A stretch of 63,806 nt of DNA, filler included, from Octopus bimaculoides (GCF_001194135.2; 7 parts of 6 records of this genome joined end to end with filler, not necessarily neighbours in it); one strand, 5' to 3'; counted from the first letter of the whole stretch, positions 37,443-48,578 are shown. Translations and numbers: made by a program. Notes: generated by a model from the sequence alone, not told the origin.

Positions 37443-37833
37443 TCCCGTGTTGGTGGCACGTAAAAAGCACCATCCAAACATGGTCAATGCCAGTGCCCCA
37501 CTACTGGCTCCCGTACTTGGTGGCACATAAAAAAACACACCATCCAAACGTGGTTGATGCCAGTGGCCCCCCCCCTACTGGCTCCCATGCTGGTGGCACA
37601 TAAAAAGCACCATCTCAACGTGATCGATGCCAGAACCACCTGACTGGCCCTCATACCAGTGGCACCTAAAAACCACCCTCTACACTCTCAGAGTGGTTGG
37701 CATTAGGAAGGGCATCCAGCTGTAGAAACATTGCCAGATCACATTGGAGCCTGGTGCAGCCTCCTGGCTTGCCAGACCTCAGTCAAACCGTCCAACCCAT
37801 GCCAGCATGGAAAACGGACGTTAAACGATGATG
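37443..37833 (+). mobile_element. Family N SINE with an internal 65-70 bp tandem array
   Basis: About 3.5 units of TCCCGTG..GGTGGCACRTAAAAAGCACC..GCCAGT..ACTGGC, then the Nin/Deu-like motif and tail. Confidence 0.8.
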
Positions 37834-39632: not shown

Positions 39633-39838
39633 TACTCTTTTACTCTTTTACTCTTTTACTTGTTTCAGTCATTTGACTGCGGCCATGCTGGAGCACCGCC
39701 TTTAGTCGAGCAAATCGACCCCAGGACTTATTCTTTGTAAGCCTAGTACTTATTCTATCGGTCTCTTTTGCCGAACAGTTACGGGGACGTAAACACACCA
39801 GCATCGGTTGTCAAGCGATGTTGGGGGAACAAACACAG

Positions 39839-39871
<33 letters not shown>

Positions 39872-40040
39872 CATATATATATACGACAGTCTTCTTTCAG
39901 TTTCCGTCTACCAAATCCACTCACGAGGCTTTGGTCGGCCCGAGGCTATAGTAGAAGACACTTGCCCAAGGTGCCACGCAGTGGGACTGAACCCAGAACC
40001 ATGTGGTTGGTAAGCAAGCTACTTGCCACACAGCCACTCC
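39633..40040 (-). mobile_element. Full-length family C SINE
   Basis: Near-identical to 8029-8485 in reverse; (AAAAGAGT)n tail. Confidence 0.9.
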
Positions 40041-42080: not shown

Positions 42081-42649
42081 TTATAATAACAAATGCACAC
42101 ATGATTTCGTTTTTACCTGTGCATTGTAGTTGAAATTTCCTGACACACCCACTCTCTGACAAAGCCTGACAAAAGTATATTCAAAGGTGTCACTCTTACT
42201 CTTACCATAATCGAGTGTGACGGTCGAGGTACAAAACAGGAAGGTGATGCAATCCACAGTCATTTATTGCTGCATAACTTTAATTTACCATTTTCTGATG
42301 ATTTCCGTTTGTACTTTGATGTGTCATTTTCCACTCGTTGTTCTACGCCCAACGAAACACAGATGGGACGGGGTTTTGCAGTGACTCGTTTTTAGGGAGT
42401 AGGTTTCCAGCTGCTCCCACCCACACGCCAAGAGATATATACATATATACATTTACTTTCATACGCCAACAGCGTGTATATGTACACAAGTTAAGTTATT
42501 CATATCTTCCATATTTTACTTGTTTCAGTCATTCGACTATGGCCATGCTGGGGCAAGTCACCTTCAAGACTTTTTTTTTTAAAGTCTGGTCAAACTGCTA
42601 AGTCTTGGGATGTAAATAAACCAACACTAGTAGTCATGCAGTGGTCCAG

Positions 42650-42870
42650 GATTCACACATGTATGTGTGTGTGTGTATATATATATATATACTTATATAT
42701 ATACACACACACACATATATATGATATATAGATTATATATACATATATACATACACATATATATACATATATATATATATGTATACACATATATACATAT
42801 ACACACACACACACATATATATAATATATATATATATATATATGTATATATATGTGTATGTATATATGTA

Positions 42871-42964
<94 letters not shown>

Positions 42965-43135
42965 ATATATATATATATATGTGTGTATGTATATATGTAT
43001 ATATACATGCATATATATATATATATATACATCCATATATATATATATATATATATTTATGTATATATATTGTTTGGGTATATATATATGAATGTGTGTG
43101 TGGGTGTGTATATATATGTGTGTGTGTGTGTGTTT
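42650..43135. repeat. Compound (TA/CA/TG)n microsatellite at the internal tract of a minus-strand family C SINE
   Basis: SINE 3' half at about 42515-42650 runs directly into the tract. Confidence 0.85.
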
Positions 43136-43160
43136 GCTATTATTTATACTACACCACTCA

Positions 43161-43560
43161 AGGCAATGAGCTGGCAGAGTCGTTAGCATGCTGGACGAAA
43201 TGCTTAGCGGTGTTTTGCCCATTGCTATGTTCAGAGTTCAAATTCCACCAAGGTCAACTTTGCCTTTTCATTCTTTCGGGGGTTGATAAATTAATTAAGT
43301 ACCAGTAANNNNNNNNNNNNNNNNNNNNNNNNNNNNNNNNNNNNNNNNNNNNNNNNNNNNNNNNNNNNNNNNNNNNNNNNNNNNNNNNNNNNNNNNNNNN
43401 NNNNNNNNNNNNNNNNNNNNNNNNNNNNNNNNNNNNNNNNNNNNNNNNNNNNNNNNNNNNNNNNNNNNNNNNNNNNNNNNNNNNNNNNNNNNNNNNNNNN
43501 NNNNNNNNNNNNNNNNNNNNNNAAAAAAAATTTCAGGCCTTGTGCCTATAGTAGAAAGGA
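43161..43560 (+). mobile_element. Family M SINE spanning a gap
   Basis: Head and body before the gap; GGCCTTGTGCCTATAGTAGAAAGG tail after it. Confidence 0.7.
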
Positions 43561-44245
43561 TTTATAACACACCACTCCTGGAACCTTCCCAGTGTTGGAT
43601 GTTGTGCCTACAGTGGACTGTACACTGCATCCTGGAGTAAACCGGAGTATATTCTTGTTTGATTTTGAATGTATTCGGTATATAATGGTCGTCCTCAACT
43701 TACAACCACAATTTGTTCCAACTGACTGGTCATAAGTCGGCCTATAGGCCTACATAGCTTTGTTTATATTTTTACATACTTAAGGTACATTCTCAGGTAG
43801 AAGTCACAATGACCCGTCTTATTTTTGCCTGTCCTTCTAATTGTTGTTTTTCTTGTCCGCCTATGCATCGTCAATCTGTCCGAATGTTTTAATGCCCTCT
43901 ATTGCGTTTTTGTTCCATTTTTATATTTATGGAACATATATATATTTTATATATATATATATACAAAATTAAGAGGAATGACCAACAAAATTGGACTCCT
44001 ATATGCTAGAAATAGATGCCAAATCACCTAACCACGAAGAGTATGTTCTCAAGAAGAAAATTTCAGCAAGACGCCAGACTGTAAAAAGGAGCAAGACAGA
44101 TGAAAATATACGAAATAATTTGGCATCTATTTTTAGCATTTAGGAGTCCACTTTTGGTGGTCATTCCTCTTATTTTTCTATGTAATATAATTTCAATCTT
44201 CGGATTTTTTTTAAATATGCTAGGCCACTGGTTTTAATTGATTAA

Positions 44246-44635
44246 TGTAGTAAGTAGCTTGCTTACCAACCGCATGGTTCCGGGTTCAACCTTAGGAAAG
44301 TGTCTTCTACTATAGCCTCGGGCCAACCAAAGCCTTGTGAGTGGATTTGGTAGATGGAAACTGTAAGAAGCCCGTCGTATATATGTATATATATATATAT
44401 ATGTATGTGTGTATATGTTGTGTATCTGTGTTTATCCCCCCAACATCGCTTGACAACCGATGCTGGTGTGTTTAGGTCCCCGTAACTTAGCGGTTCGGCA
44501 AAAAGAGACCGATAGAATAAGTACTAGGCTTACAAAGAATAAGTCCTGGGGTCGATTTGATTCGACTAAAGGCGGTGCTCCAGCATGGCTGCAGTCAAAT
44601 GACTGAAACAAGTAAAGAAAGTAAAGAAAGAAAGA
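44246..44635 (+). mobile_element. Family C SINE immediately upstream of the IL-17-like gene
   Basis: Near full-length copy with internal TA/TG tract and AAGTAAAGAAAG tail. Confidence 0.85.
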
Positions 44636-44697
44636 ATATATGCACTTCATATTTAAGGCTCTGATGAAGTTATAAGGTGTTATTCAGGCACTTAACT

Positions 44698-44730
44698 ATG
44701 AGTCCACTGCACCATGTAGCTGAAACAACT
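44698..44730 (+). CDS. Candidate first exon of the IL-17-like gene (MSPLHHVAETT)
   Basis: ATG at 44698 and exactly 11 codons before a GTAAGC donor at 44731. A 163-bp intron would join it in phase 0 to ATG 44894. TATA-like words at 44650 and 44670. Confidence 0.4.
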
Positions 44731-44893
44731 GTAAGCTAATGAACTTCATAAGATAAATCATTTATTCCTTTATGATCTCATTTTCTTATAAATCTTGAAT
44801 GTATATAATATATGTAATCAATTATTTCCTAACCCTAAATATTACCAAATAAATTTTTAAATTCTAATGTTCCTTTTTTTTTTTTTTCTTCAG

Positions 44894-45418
44894 ATGCTGG
44901 CATTATCTGCTGTGATTTTGTTCATTTCATCCACCTTCTTGGCATCTGTAGAGGCTTCACCCATACCAGGCCCTGAATGCAAAGAACCAAACATCTTACT
45001 CCACAACTCGGTCGCCTTCGGGACAGCTAGTGGTGAAGCCGCTGCAGGCAATGATGGCGACGGTGATGACGACGAAGATTACAATGACGGGCATTTATCA
45101 GTTGAAGATAGAGCCATATGCCCTTGGAAAATAGTTAAGGTTATAGATGACAGTCGCTACCCTCGCATCTTAAAGACAGTCCATTGCAGAACAAACACAT
45201 GGGACAATGGCACATGTGTTCCAGTCATACACAATTTCACAGTGCTCTATCGTACAGACAAGTGTATGAAGTTGTCTGAAACAAATGAAACTGAAGTGCT
45301 ATATGCTTACAGGCCAGACACCCTTCAACTAGCAGTTGCCTGCACATCTGTACTTAATACTTCCACTGTTGACCAGGGCAATAGTAGTGTTCACAATAAA
45401 CTAATATCCTCACCTTAA
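44894..45418 (+). CDS. IL17: IL-17-like secreted cytokine (cystine-knot family), main coding exon, 174 aa
   Basis: Intact ORF starting just after a polypyrimidine tract and CAG acceptor (AG at 44892-44893). Hydrophobic signal peptide MLALSAVILFISSTFLASVEA, then IL-17 motifs CKEP, RAICPW..DxxRYPxxL..VHC, CVPV...VLYR..C and AVACTSV. Confidence 0.88.
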   Translation: MLALSAVILFISSTFLASVEASPIPGPECKEPNILLHNSVAFGTASGEAAAGNDGDGDDDEDYNDGHLSVEDRAICPWKIVKVIDDSRYPRILKTVHCRTNTWDNGTCVPVIHNFTVLYRTDKCMKLSETNETEVLYAYRPDTLQLAVACTSVLNTSTVDQGNSSVHNKLISSP

Positions 45419-45748
45419 GAGTGATTCACCATTTCTTCTGGATCTGTGTTGGTTGAGAATGGAAATACCAGTCCGTTTTTGTGTGTGCATATGTATATTA
45501 ATCAGAGTGTGCAATATTATGTATCCATTACGGCCAATCTTACCAGTCAGTTTTGCACTAGGTGTTCAACAGAGTCTTTGATAACAGCCTGATTATGTAA
45601 CCCTGCACTCTTCAGAGATGGCAGTTACAGAATGAGATATGGGCGTATCTCATTCCGTAATATATAAAACTGTACACTTCGATTAATATATCCTCTATAT
45701 TGATAAATATACGAGTACATATTTTTTCTGACATGGATTCTTAGGTGG

Positions 45749-45789
<41 letters not shown>

Positions 45790-45810
45790 GTGTGTGTATG
45801 TGTGTGCACG

Positions 45811-45860
<50 letters not shown>

Positions 45861-46087
45861 TATGTATGTATAGAGAGATGGAGAGAGGTGTGTGTTTGTA
45901 TGTAATGTATATAAATGTATGTATAAACATTTTACAGCCCATTTCCATCATAAATATCTTGTTGAATCATACTTTTAATACTCGTAATTAAGCAATGTGT
46001 ATATATACCATAGAGAGACCACTCTCATAGAACACTATGTATGGCTATAATTAACATTTGTACATAGTATATCAAACTGCTAGTGTG

Positions 46088-46332
46088 TAAGGTTGACCAA
46101 AAGTCACCCGACAGTAAATCAAAACCCATTTAATTCCAAGATTAAAACAAAAACTTATTTTATACAAGACTTTGCTGATAAATAGACAAATGTTGAAAAA
46201 AGAAAAAAAAACCGGTGATTTTTAACTCATAACATTCAATTATTAAGCATTCATAATTGGAATGAATAAATAAAATTGAATATTTAGTATTTGAGGAATT
46301 TTGATTTACTGTTGGGTGACTTTTGGCCAACC

Positions 46333-47553: not shown

Positions 47554-48578
47554 CAAGTATTTCTTAACCAGGCTCCATGTAAGATTTTTAATAGTAAATT
47601 AGGTATCCACAATAGTATATTGAGGGCTTCTATTCTGAAAAGATTTTGCATTAGATAATTCGACGACTGGCACACATGCCACAACGTCGTCTCCTTCATT
47701 GGACACGAAACTCAGCTTGCGAAGACTTATTTGAGCAAGCGAAAGCGAAATCGTGGTGGCACCTGTGCCCAGCGTCGCCTTTCTGGCACTTGTGCCCGCG
47801 GCATGTGTAAGGACTTTCGAGCGAGATCGTTGCCAGTGCCCCTTGACTGGCTCTTGTGCGGGTGGCACATAAAATACACCATTTTGAGCGTGGCCGTTGC
47901 CAGTACCGCCTGACTGGCCTTCGTAGGACTTTCGAGCGAGATCGTTGCCAGTGCCCTTGGACTGGCCTTCGTGCGGGTGACACGTAAAAGCACCCACTAC
48001 ACTCTCGGAGTGGTTGGCGTTAGGAAGGGCATCCAGCTGTAGAANNNNNNNNNNCCCGCGGCATGTGTAAGGACTTTCGAGCGAGATCGTTGCCAGTGCC
48101 CCTTGACTGGCTCTTGTGCGGGTGGCACATAAAATACACCATTTTGAGCGTGGCCGTTGCCAGTACCGCCTGACTGGCCTTCGTAGGACTTTCGAGCGAG
48201 ATCGTTGCCAGTGCCCTTGGACTGGCCTTCGTGCGGGTGACACGTAAAAGCACCCACTACACTCTCGGAGTGGTTGGCGTTAGGAAGGGCATCCAGCTGT
48301 AGAAACTCTGCCAAATCAGATTGGAGCCTGGTGTAGCCATCTGGTTTCACCAGTCCTCAGTCAAATCGTCCAACCCATGCTAGCATGGAAAGCGGACGTT
48401 AAACGACGACGACGACGTGTGTATTGCAAGAAATAGGTTTTTTTCTCAAAAAACAAAATAAGAATTTCGAAAGAAGTTTCTATAAAACTAGTTTTAAAAA
48501 CATCTGACGGCTATGGGGGGTCCACCAGAATAAAATAGTAATCAAAGGGGTCCATAGATAAGAAATGACAGAGATCCT
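47554..48578. mobile_element. Degenerate hAT MITE (family of 8832-9417) split by a family N SINE
   Basis: Left and right halves match the 8832 element on either side of the SINE. Confidence 0.45.
47657..48417 (+). mobile_element. Long family N SINE (includes a 250-bp assembly duplication)
   Basis: Tandem GCCAGT..ACTGGC units, Nin/Deu-like motif and GGACGTTAAAC(GAC)n tail. Confidence 0.8.

What the first reader, a model, noticed from the sequence alone, without database searches (positions are those of the whole stretch)
44894..45418. IL-17-like cytokine that has lost one whole cystine-knot disulfide
Seen: the mature protein has six Cys (CKEP, ICPW, VHC, TCVPV, DKC, ACTS). Established: in IL-17s the Cys in EAxC pairs with the first Cys of CxC, and a second Cys a few residues later pairs with the last Cys of CxC; invertebrate IL-17s add a CPW to CxPV bond. 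Here both partners of the second bond are absent (RTNTW has no Cys; CTC reads CTS) while the CPW/CVPV pair is kept. Inference: paired loss in an intact ORF suggests selection on an unknotted, divergent paralog. Octopus IL-17-like genes are reported as an expanded tandem cluster.
Basis: partly seen in the sequence, partly recalled or inferred. Interest (0 to 1): 0.75.

Follow-up and report, generated by a model that had tools for sequence, protein, structure and literature searches.

The report
Octopus IL-17-like cytokine, two-disulfide type
This is a real, spliced and expressed octopus gene for a secreted IL-17-like cytokine that lacks one of the three cystine-knot disulfides, but that variant (type T1C) is already catalogued and occurs in every mollusc IL-17 set I could check, so it is an ordinary family member.

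Summary
Window 44894-45418 (+) encodes a 174-aa protein with a signal peptide, an acidic N-terminal segment and a C-terminal IL-17 domain (Pfam PF06083, E=4.6e-9). Its AlphaFold model matches only IL-17A/F/IL-25 structures. The mature protein has six Cys. Knot positions 1, 2, 4 and 5 are kept; positions 3 and 6 are both missing.

The gene is functional. RNA contigs splice onto the exon exactly at the ATG, from two alternative non-coding first exons. The positional ortholog in Octopus vulgaris is intact, keeps all six Cys and the CTS motif, and gives dN/dS of 0.37.

The claimed novelty does not hold. Loss of disulfide 3/6 is the published "T1C" type of IL-17 knot (PNAS 2024), described as common in invertebrates. 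In my own classification, 6 of 47 published mollusc IL-17s are T1C, with at least one in each of mussel, limpet, oyster and pearl oyster. Both C. elegans IL-17s in the set are T1C too. The octopus protein's nearest relatives are full-knot (T1A) proteins, so its loss looks independent.

One thing is unexplained. The coding sequence is about three times more diverged between the two octopus species than the flanking intron and UTR.

The parts
42172..42490 (+). Alternative non-coding first exon B (5' UTR), used in runs X17 and X19
   Evidence: The same 1201-nt RNA contig of X19 lies on 42172-42490 and on 44892-45775. An X17 contig lies on 42314-42490 and continues with ATGCTGGCATTATCTG..., the start of the coding exon. 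There is no in-frame ATG between the last in-frame stop and the junction.
42491..44893 (+). Intron between exon B and the coding exon. It ends in a poly-T tract plus cag (44874-44893).
   Evidence: RNA depth over 44623-44858 is 0 in X9 and X10, under 10 for most of the stretch in X19 (one short 59-66 peak at 44727-44752), and 15 across most of it (short peaks up to 141) in X17. The exon stands at 8-723. The junction is ambiguous by 2 nt, and no placement gives GT..AG in this reference (TT..AG or GT..CA).
44894..45418 (+). Complete coding sequence (174 codons plus stop) of the IL-17-like protein. The exon begins at the ATG.
   Evidence: RNA contigs leave the genome at 44892-44894 in all four runs. 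Exon A carries an in-frame TAG 9 codons upstream of the ATG.
44894..44956 (+). Signal peptide, residues 1-21 (MLALSAVILFISSTFLASVEA|SP)
   Evidence: Read from the sequence: a hydrophobic core, with V at -3 and A at -1. It is conserved in the O. vulgaris ortholog. No signal-peptide predictor was run.
44957..45109 (+). N-terminal segment of the mature protein (residues 22-72). It carries the C-x-E-P motif (Cys29, 44978-44980) and an acidic low-complexity run (GNDGDGDDDEDYNDG).
   Evidence: pLDDT is 37-53 for the first 40 mature residues, so it is predicted disordered. The CxEP motif recurs in mollusc IL-17s.
45116..45352 (+). IL-17 domain (residues 75-153). Knot Cys1 = Cys76 (45119-45121), Cys2 = Cys98 (45185-45187), Cys4 = Cys108 (45215-45217), Cys5 = Cys150 (45341-45343). 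The loop Cys124 is at 45263-45265.
   Evidence: Pfam PF06083, residues 75-153. Model core pLDDT is 84-89. The Foldseek top 50 are all IL-17A/F/IL-25.
45188..45202 (+). RTNTW segment, where knot Cys3 would lie. There is no Cys here.
   Evidence: Alignment columns for Cys3. O. vulgaris has KTRTW at the same place.
45347..45349 (+). Ser152 codon (tct) at the position of knot Cys6 (CTC reads CTS)
   Evidence: O. vulgaris has the same TCT codon.
45419..45775 (+). 3' UTR, at least this far. RNA contigs stop at the (TA)n microsatellite.
   Evidence: Contigs of X9 and X19 run uninterrupted from 44901 to 45775.

Best explanation
This is a functional gene for a secreted IL-17-family ligand of the T1C knot type.

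Shown:
- The gene has a non-coding first exon, with two alternatives used in different samples, spliced to one exon that holds the whole CDS.
- The product has a signal peptide, a disordered acidic N-terminal segment and an IL-17 domain with the IL-17 fold.
- Knot cysteines 1, 2, 4 and 5 are present, and 3 and 6 are both absent.
- The same pattern is kept in the Octopus vulgaris positional ortholog, under purifying selection.

Inferred:
- The domain is held by two disulfides, Cys76-Cys108 (1/4, the bond vertebrates lack) and Cys98-Cys150 (2/5). Together these still tie the four beta-strands. The ring of the knot is open, so nothing is threaded.
- The two extra cysteines, Cys29 (N-terminal CxEP) and Cys124 (beta3-beta4 loop), sit where IL-17A/F have their inter-chain pair. 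They probably link a parallel homodimer.
- The dimer would bind an IL-17R-type receptor and signal through an Act1/CIKS-like adaptor, as T1C-type IL-17s appear to do in C. elegans.
- By analogy with the other octopus IL-17-like genes, the likely role is in epithelial (skin or sucker) defence.
For: Family and fold:
- Pfam IL17, E=4.6e-9, 37 bits against a cut-off of 24.
- AlphaFold2 core pLDDT is 84-89. The Foldseek PDB top 50 are all IL-17A, IL-17F or IL-25, at probability 1.00.
- A profile of mollusc IL-17 domains hits IL-17A at 4e-14 and fixes the six knot columns.

Cys pattern:
- The pattern CC-CC- is T1C as defined in PMC11087794.
- The O. vulgaris ortholog (collinear flanks) has the same six Cys and the CTS motif.

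Constraint:
- NG86 gives dN=0.23, dS=0.62 and dN/dS=0.37 overall, and 0.37 in the IL-17 domain.

Expression and splicing:
- Exon depth is 8-723, against 0-15 over most of the 250 nt upstream.
- The junction falls at the ATG, with two different upstream exons.
- In-frame stops lie upstream in both isoforms.

Paired loss and signalling:
- Loss of C3 with C6 is the rule in molluscs: 6 sequences lack both, 4 lack only C3, 2 lack only C6 and 35 have both (Fisher p=4.6e-4).
- The inter-chain pair of IL-17A/F joins the N-terminal region to the beta3-beta4 loop (PMC5566378).
- C. elegans ILC-17.1 signals through ILCR-1/ILCR-2 and ACTL-1 (bioRxiv 10.1101/658617). Both C. elegans IL-17s in the PLoS One dataset classify as T1C.
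Against: - No disulfide was observed. Connectivity is inferred from alignment, and I could not read coordinates from the model.
- The monomer model is only moderately confident overall (mean pLDDT 67, pTM 0.51, 9-sequence alignment). No dimer was modelled.
- Tissue of expression is unknown, because run metadata are coded.
- No octopus receptor was examined.
- The high synonymous divergence (dS 0.62, against about 0.09-0.11 in the flanks) means the dN/dS of 0.37 may describe a paralogous comparison if gene conversion has occurred.
- That ILC-17.1 is F25D1.3 rests on my memory, not on a tool result.
Confidence: 0.8

Rival explanations
1. A decaying paralog. The two Cys were lost because the gene is no longer under selection, and the open frame is a leftover.
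For: The CDS is much more diverged from O. vulgaris (74% nt, 62% aa) than the flanks are (89-92%). The C-terminal tail differs in length between the species.
Against: The ORF is intact in both species, and all six Cys, CPW, RYPR and CVPV are conserved. dN/dS is 0.37, not about 1. The transcript is abundant and correctly spliced in four independent runs. The same Cys state persists in many functional-looking genes of other molluscs and nematodes.
Confidence: 0.03
2. A neofunctionalised ligand. The open-ring fold no longer activates the canonical IL-17R-Act1 pathway. It acts instead as a receptor antagonist or decoy, or on another receptor, much as the arthropod IL-17 relatives PTTH and CFSH have diverged in function.
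For: The protein is very divergent from all other IL-17s. An exhaustive phmmer search of 1.84 billion representatives found only 4 other IL-17s at E<=0.001. The coding exon evolves fast. The mollusc profile also touches PTTH, 5aoq, at E=1.7e-6. PMC11087794 documents IL-17-like ligands with neurotrophin-type roles.
Against: There is no positive evidence for this. T1C ligands appear to be working agonists in C. elegans. All top fold matches are IL-17s proper.
Confidence: 0.12
3. Misassigned cysteines. Cys108 (GTC) would really be a displaced knot Cys3 rather than Cys4. The protein would then have a different set of bonds from the one the reader and I infer.
For: The spacing from Cys98 to Cys108 is 10 residues. 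The loop between Cys2 and Cys4 is short here, so alignment in it is the least certain part.
Against: Cys108 sits in the conserved C-x-P-[VI] motif, followed by the N-x-x-V-L-x-R-T strand that marks Cys4 in all mollusc sequences. Both MAFFT and hmmalign place it in the Cys4 column. A Cys3 would have no Cys6 partner.
Confidence: 0.05

Closest known systems
T1C-type invertebrate IL-17 ligands (classification of PMC11087794). Examples: Mytilus galloprovincialis IL17-18 and IL17-21, Crassostrea gigas EKC32654, Lottia gigantea 169526 and 159302, Pinctada fucata 72074, C. elegans NP_505700 and NP_510131.
   Same: The knot pattern is identical: Cys1, 2, 4 and 5 present, Cys3 and 6 absent (CPW ... xxxC ... 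CxP/E ... GC-x-nonCys). They are also secreted-type small proteins with a C-terminal IL-17 domain.
   Different: Sequence identity is only about 23-31%. The octopus protein's best matches are T1A proteins, not these, so its loss of 3/6 is probably independent. It also has the extra pair Cys29/Cys124 and an acidic insert that the mussel T1C isoforms lack.
Canonical full-knot (T1A) mollusc IL-17s, e.g. Haliotis cracherodii XP_071092652 (P0006/P0016), P0004, P0005, Mytilus IL17-9, CgIL-17 ABO93467
   Same: These are the closest in sequence (33-42% in the domain). They share the CxEP N-terminal motif, CPW, RYP, CxPV and the RTxC loop Cys.
   Different: They have C-x-C-x2-C after the EA motif and C-T-C at the end, giving 8 domain Cys. 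The octopus protein has one Cys at each place.
Vertebrate IL-17A/IL-17F (type T2; PDB 4hsa, 1jpy)
   Same: They share the fold (Foldseek probability 1.0, TM to target 0.55-0.71), the 2/5 disulfide, and an N-terminal Cys plus a beta3-beta4 loop Cys at the positions of the inter-chain bond.
   Different: Vertebrates keep 2/5 and 3/6 and lack 1/4 (Ser in SPW and NSVP). The octopus protein keeps 1/4 and 2/5 and lacks 3/6. Identity is about 20%.
PTTH / Trunk (cystine-knot relatives of IL-17; PDB 5aoq)
   Same: They belong to the same superfamily. The mollusc IL-17 profile reaches PTTH at E=1.7e-6.
   Different: That match is far weaker than the match to IL-17A (4e-14). Pfam assigns only IL17, and the top 50 Foldseek hits contain no PTTH.

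Membership tests
IL-17 family (Pfam PF06083) | Sequence match to the IL-17 domain model above the curated threshold | tested here: met
   37 bits against a cut-off of 24, E=4.6e-9, residues 75-153, covering model positions 2-80 of 81.
IL-17 family (Pfam PF06083) | IL-17 fold (two beta-hairpins, cystine-knot-like) | tested here: met
   The AlphaFold2 model shows four long strands with core pLDDT 84-89. Its 50 best PDB matches are all IL-17A, IL-17F or IL-25.
IL-17 family (Pfam PF06083) | Secreted: N-terminal signal peptide | tested here: inconclusive
   The N-terminus is hydrophobic and has a VEA|S cleavage motif. RNA evidence shows the ATG at 44894 is the first in-frame start. No dedicated predictor or experiment was available.
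IL-17 family (Pfam PF06083) | Dimeric ligand that binds an IL-17R (double FN3 plus SEFIR) receptor | not testable with these tools
   Only a monomer could be modelled, and no receptor sequence was available.
T1C structural type of IL-17 knot (PMC11087794) | Cysteines 1 and 4 present (the bond absent in vertebrates) | tested here: met
   Cys76 lies in CPW and Cys108 in CVPV. Both fall in the Cys1 and Cys4 columns.
T1C structural type of IL-17 knot (PMC11087794) | Cysteines 2 and 5 present | tested here: met
   Cys98 aligns with EAKC of IL-17A. Cys150 aligns with the first Cys of GCTC.
T1C structural type of IL-17 knot (PMC11087794) | Cysteines 3 and 6 both absent | tested here: met
   The Cys3 column holds T and the Cys6 column holds Ser152. 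O. vulgaris is the same.
T1C structural type of IL-17 knot (PMC11087794) | The remaining two disulfides actually form (1/4 and 2/5) | not testable with these tools
   Model coordinates cannot be read here. This needs disulfide mapping.
Canonical cystine knot (three disulfides, one threaded through a ring) | Ring closed by disulfides 2/5 and 3/6, with 1/4 passing through it | tested here: not met
   Neither residue of the 3/6 pair is a Cys, so the ring cannot close. The protein is IL-17-like but not a true knot. Vertebrate IL-17s are not true knots either, for the opposite reason.

The most novel reading that the evidence does not exclude
The coding exon of this cytokine gene is a hot spot of exon-confined accelerated evolution. 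The cysteine scaffold stays frozen while the rest of the coding sequence diverges two to four times faster than the adjacent intron, UTR and downstream DNA, at synonymous sites too. That is the pattern described for cone-snail toxin genes (from my own knowledge). It would point to diversifying selection, or to an exon-targeted mutational or gene-conversion process, acting on cephalopod mucosal cytokines.
Probability: 0.2. Interest if true: 0.5.

Novelty: new member of a known kind. Interest (0 to 1): 0.2.

Why it matters
It matters little for the question asked. The loss of one knot disulfide does not mark a new kind of cytokine, because it is a catalogued state (T1C) that recurs often.

The result is useful in three small ways:
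- It gives a checked gene model for an octopus IL-17-like gene: true start codon, two alternative non-coding first exons, one coding exon. The O. vulgaris database model carries a spurious 27-aa N-terminal extension.
- It adds a cephalopod example that seems to have reached T1C independently of bivalves and limpets. This supports the view that either ring disulfide of the IL-17 knot is dispensable.
- It flags a coding exon that diverges faster than its flanks, which could be followed up with more octopod genomes.

Tried and rejected
- Sequence search of the PDB with the single protein gave only low-complexity hits to TFIIE. A profile was needed.
- The three word-indexed protein searches and the exhaustive phmmer search returned very few IL-17s. 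None was another octopus paralog, so I could not survey the 31-36 octopus IL-17-like genes. One search failed on the E-value limit.
- P0003, a 1094-aa repeat protein, is a spurious hit to the N-terminal segment (residues 16-65).
- The exact 174-aa product is not on record as a called gene.
- Laying DNA runs X1 and X4 and other-species runs X21 and X23 at 80% likeness found neither paralogs nor the locus itself, so it is uninformative.
- Hymowitz 2001 and Albertin 2015 are not held. Their content is cited only through papers that quote them.
- The PNAS 2024 supplement is not held.
- I tested CpG decay as an explanation for the fast CDS and rejected it as sufficient. Non-CpG sites still differ at 22%, against 8-10% in the flanks.
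- I considered an N-terminal extension, as in the O. vulgaris model, and rejected it. The orthologous 5' exon has an in-frame TAG here, and exon B has in-frame stops.

Full report
**1. What is in the sequence**

Window 44894-45418 (+) is an open frame of 174 codons. It is directly preceded by a poly-T tract and cag. The other ORFs of 150 aa or more in the 14.7-kb piece overlap runs of N, the TA microsatellite or the 260-bp tandem repeat.

The product reads MLALSAVILFISSTFLASVEA|SPIPGPECKEP... Pfam assigns residues 75-153 to IL17 (PF06083) at E=4.6e-9, 37 bits against a gathering score of 24, and assigns no other family.

**2. Gene structure and expression**

Four RNA runs of the same organism hold contigs that cover 44901-45775 without a difference, at word depths of 97, 723, 69 and 8.

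The 250 nt just upstream behave like an intron:
- X9 and X10 have depth 0.
- X19 stays under 10 for most of the stretch, with one short peak of 59-66 at 44727-44752.
- X17 stands at 15 across most of it, with short peaks up to 141. This is probably unspliced precursor.

Laying the contigs on 44886-45200 shows that all of them leave the genome at 44892-44894, with two different upstream sequences.

- In X9 and X10 the upstream sequence ends ...ATCTAGCTACAAATCTGTTCACATACTAAC|ATG. This exon (A) is not in the piece. It is the counterpart of exon 1 of the O. vulgaris model (L001 10001-10084...GCTACAAATCCTTTCACACCCTAAA|gtaagt). Here it carries an in-frame TAG nine codons before the ATG.
- In X17 and X19 the upstream sequence is window 42172-42490 (X17 from 42314, preceded by adapter sequence). 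The same 1201-nt X19 contig spans both exons. This exon (B) has in-frame stops and no in-frame ATG before the junction, only short out-of-frame uORFs.

So the whole CDS lies in one exon and begins at that exon's first base, and the ATG at 44894 is the true start. The 27-residue N-terminal extension of the O. vulgaris database protein (P0002, CAI9744255) is very likely an annotation artefact.

The junction of exon B is ambiguous by two bases. No placement gives GT..AG in this reference; the options are TT..AG or GT..CA.

**3. Family and fold**

An AlphaFold2 model of the mature protein was built from a 9-sequence alignment. Mean pLDDT is 67, and 84-89 in the core. The first 40 or so residues are disordered, followed by four long strands. 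Its 50 best matches in the PDB are all IL-17A, IL-17F or IL-25, at Foldseek probability 1.00 and TM 0.51-0.71 normalised to the target.

**4. Which cysteines are missing**

I aligned the octopus pair with four relatives from the exhaustive search and 19 of the 23 Mytilus isoforms (alignment A2: 25 sequences; PMC8353272 Supplementary Data 2). I then aligned the resulting profile to PDB IL-17A (E=4e-14). The correspondence is:

| Octopus residue | IL-17A position | Knot position |
|---|---|---|
| C of CPW (Cys76) | S of SPW | Cys1 |
| VHC (Cys98) | EAKC | Cys2 |
| none, in RTNTW | LGC | Cys3 (missing) |
| C of CVPV (Cys108) | S of NSVPI | Cys4 |
| ACTS (Cys150, Ser152) | GCTC | Cys5 kept, Cys6 replaced by Ser |

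PMC11087794 states that the ancestral knot has bonds 1/4, 2/5 and 3/6, and that vertebrates (type T2) have lost 1/4. PMC4517768 says the same of the 'third' invertebrate disulfide.

Without 3/6 the ring of the knot is open, so 'unknotted' is topologically right. Vertebrate IL-17s are not true knots either.

The two remaining cysteines, Cys29 in a C-x-E-P motif and Cys124 in the beta3-beta4 loop, occupy the positions of the inter-chain pair of IL-17A/F. That pair joins the N-terminal region to the beta3-beta4 loop, Cys129A-Cys47F in the A/F heterodimer (PMC5566378). That they form an inter-chain bond here is inference.

**5. Is the gene under selection?**

The only close relative in 5.8 billion protein clusters is an unnamed O. 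vulgaris protein at 62% identity. Its locus (L001, OX597843.1) is collinear with the piece over about 14 kb of intron and flank. Its coding exon also starts cag|ATG, so it is the positional ortholog.

It has the same six Cys, KTRTW in place of RTNTW, and ACTS. Nei-Gojobori estimates over 157 codons are dN=0.23, dS=0.62 and dN/dS=0.37, with 0.37 in the IL-17 domain alone. There are no frameshifts.

**6. Is the pattern unusual? No**

PMC11087794 already classifies IL-17 knots into T1A, T1B (lost 2/5), T1C (lost 3/6), T2 and T3. It calls T1B/C 'commonly found in invertebrates'. PMC8353272 noted that mussel isoforms 18 and 21 have only four conserved Cys.

I classified published sequences with hmmalign on the same profile. 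Of 47 mollusc IL-17s, 26 are T1A, 9 are T1B, 6 are T1C and 6 are other. The six T1C proteins, by species:

| Species | T1C / sequences classified | T1C members |
|---|---|---|
| Mytilus | 2 / 22 | IL17-18, IL17-21 |
| Lottia | 2 / 6 | 169526, 159302 |
| Crassostrea | 1 / 7 | EKC32654 |
| Pinctada | 1 / 12 | 72074 |

Outside molluscs, the C. briggsae protein, both C. elegans proteins and one amphioxus protein in the set are also T1C.

Loss is paired as a rule. For C3 and C6, 6 sequences lack both, 4 lack only C3, 2 lack only C6 and 35 have both (p=4.6e-4). For C2 and C5 the counts are 9, 0, 0 and 38.

The octopus protein's nearest relatives, with or without the knot columns counted, are T1A proteins (Haliotis XP_071092652, P0004, P0005). 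They are not the bivalve or limpet T1C proteins. This suggests an independent loss in the cephalopod lineage, but the evidence is weak because the domains are short.

**7. Mechanism**

The best-supported reading is a secreted, probably disulfide-linked dimeric IL-17-type ligand with a two-disulfide (1/4 + 2/5) core.

T1C ligands appear able to signal. C. elegans ILC-17.1 acts through ILCR-1/ILCR-2 and ACTL-1, and both C. elegans IL-17s in the dataset are T1C. That ILC-17.1 is F25D1.3 comes from my memory.

Octopus IL-17-like genes are reported as an expansion of 31-36 genes, most of them expressed in suckers and skin (Albertin 2015, as quoted in PMC8353272 and PMC10055819). I could not determine tissue here because run labels are coded. 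No second IL-17 ORF turned up in the piece or in the 33.7-kb O. vulgaris locus.

**8. An unexplained side observation**

The coding sequence is more diverged from O. vulgaris than everything around it:

| Region | Nucleotide identity |
|---|---|
| CDS | 74% |
| Last 253 nt of the intron | 92% |
| 3' UTR | 89.5% |
| Further downstream | 85-91% |

Differences per site:

| Class of site | Differences per site |
|---|---|
| Codon position 1 | 0.24 |
| Codon position 2 | 0.16 |
| Codon position 3 | 0.36 |
| Four-fold degenerate sites | 0.34 |
| Flanks | 0.08-0.10 |

Non-synonymous sites (72 of 362) exceed intron plus UTR (54 of 565), p=1.3e-5. Removing CpG sites does not remove the effect: 22% against 8-10%. 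GC3 is 0.41 here and 0.525 in O. vulgaris.

Positive selection alone cannot raise synonymous divergence. The candidates are gene conversion of the exon from a diverged paralog of the same type in one lineage, or exon-confined accelerated evolution. No close paralog was found in the protein databases, but unannotated ones cannot be excluded. If conversion occurred, the dN/dS in section 5 describes a paralogous pair. It would still indicate constraint.

**9. Verdict**

This is a new member of a known kind (T1C-type invertebrate IL-17), and interest is low.

Noticed in passing
window 44894-45418 versus 44641-44893 and 45419-46300 (L001 23278-23757 and its flanks): The coding sequence is 74% identical to the O. 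vulgaris ortholog, while the adjacent intron end (92%), 3' UTR (89.5%) and downstream DNA (85-91%) are much closer. Four-fold sites differ at 0.34 against 0.08-0.10 in the flanks. The effect persists outside CpG sites. GC3 is 0.41 here and 0.525 in O. vulgaris. Gene conversion from a paralog or exon-confined accelerated evolution would fit; it remains unexplained.
   Followed up: partly
window 42172-42490 (exon B); exon A lies outside the piece: Two alternative non-coding first exons are spliced to the same acceptor. Their use depends on the sample: A in runs X9 and X10, B in X17 and X19. This suggests two promoters. Exon B carries five short out-of-frame uORFs.
   Followed up: partly
window 42488-42496 and 44890-44894: The exon B to coding-exon junction cannot be placed with GT..AG ends in this reference (TT..AG or GT..CA). 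The cause could be a one-base assembly error or polymorphism at the donor (acaa-g-ttaagt), or a non-canonical intron.
   Followed up: no
L001 10001-10084 (O. vulgaris OX597843.1): The database protein A0AA36C1H8/CAI9744255 starts 27 residues too early. Its exon 1 ORF is not conserved (there is an in-frame TAG in the window species), and the signal peptide begins at the exon 2 ATG.
   Followed up: yes
window about 39641-40040 (+) and about 44246-44625 (-): Two inverted copies of a repeat of about 400 nt have many copies in the O. vulgaris locus at 83-90% identity. RNA contigs pile up on it at word depths above 100,000 at 44500-44610, so it is probably an abundant SINE-like element.
   Followed up: no
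window 42676-43070 and 45750-45872: Long (TA)n microsatellites. The second ends every RNA contig of the 3' UTR. The O. vulgaris locus is about 470 nt longer there.
   Followed up: no
window 47795-48304 and 37443-37633: Tandem repeats. One has two copies of a 260-nt unit at 100% identity next to short N runs, which may be an assembly artefact. The other is a 70-nt unit (2.8 copies) with a related GGTGGCACATAAAA...GCCAGTGCCCC motif. Minus-strand ORFs there (up to 214 aa) are translations of the repeat.
   Followed up: no
published Mytilus, Pinctada, Capitella and amphioxus IL-17s: The other ring disulfide (2/5) is also lost strictly as a pair: 9 of 47 mollusc sequences lack both residues and none lacks only one. 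Three mussel isoforms (8, 19, 20) and Pinctada 51394 lack Cys3 but keep Cys6, so their Cys6 must pair elsewhere.
   Followed up: partly
window 45377-45415: The C-terminal tail is 13 residues longer than in O. vulgaris (...VDQGNSSVHNKLISSP against ...VEQ). The cause is an insertion or deletion of about 18 nt around the stop codon. The tail after the last Cys appears unconstrained.
   Followed up: no
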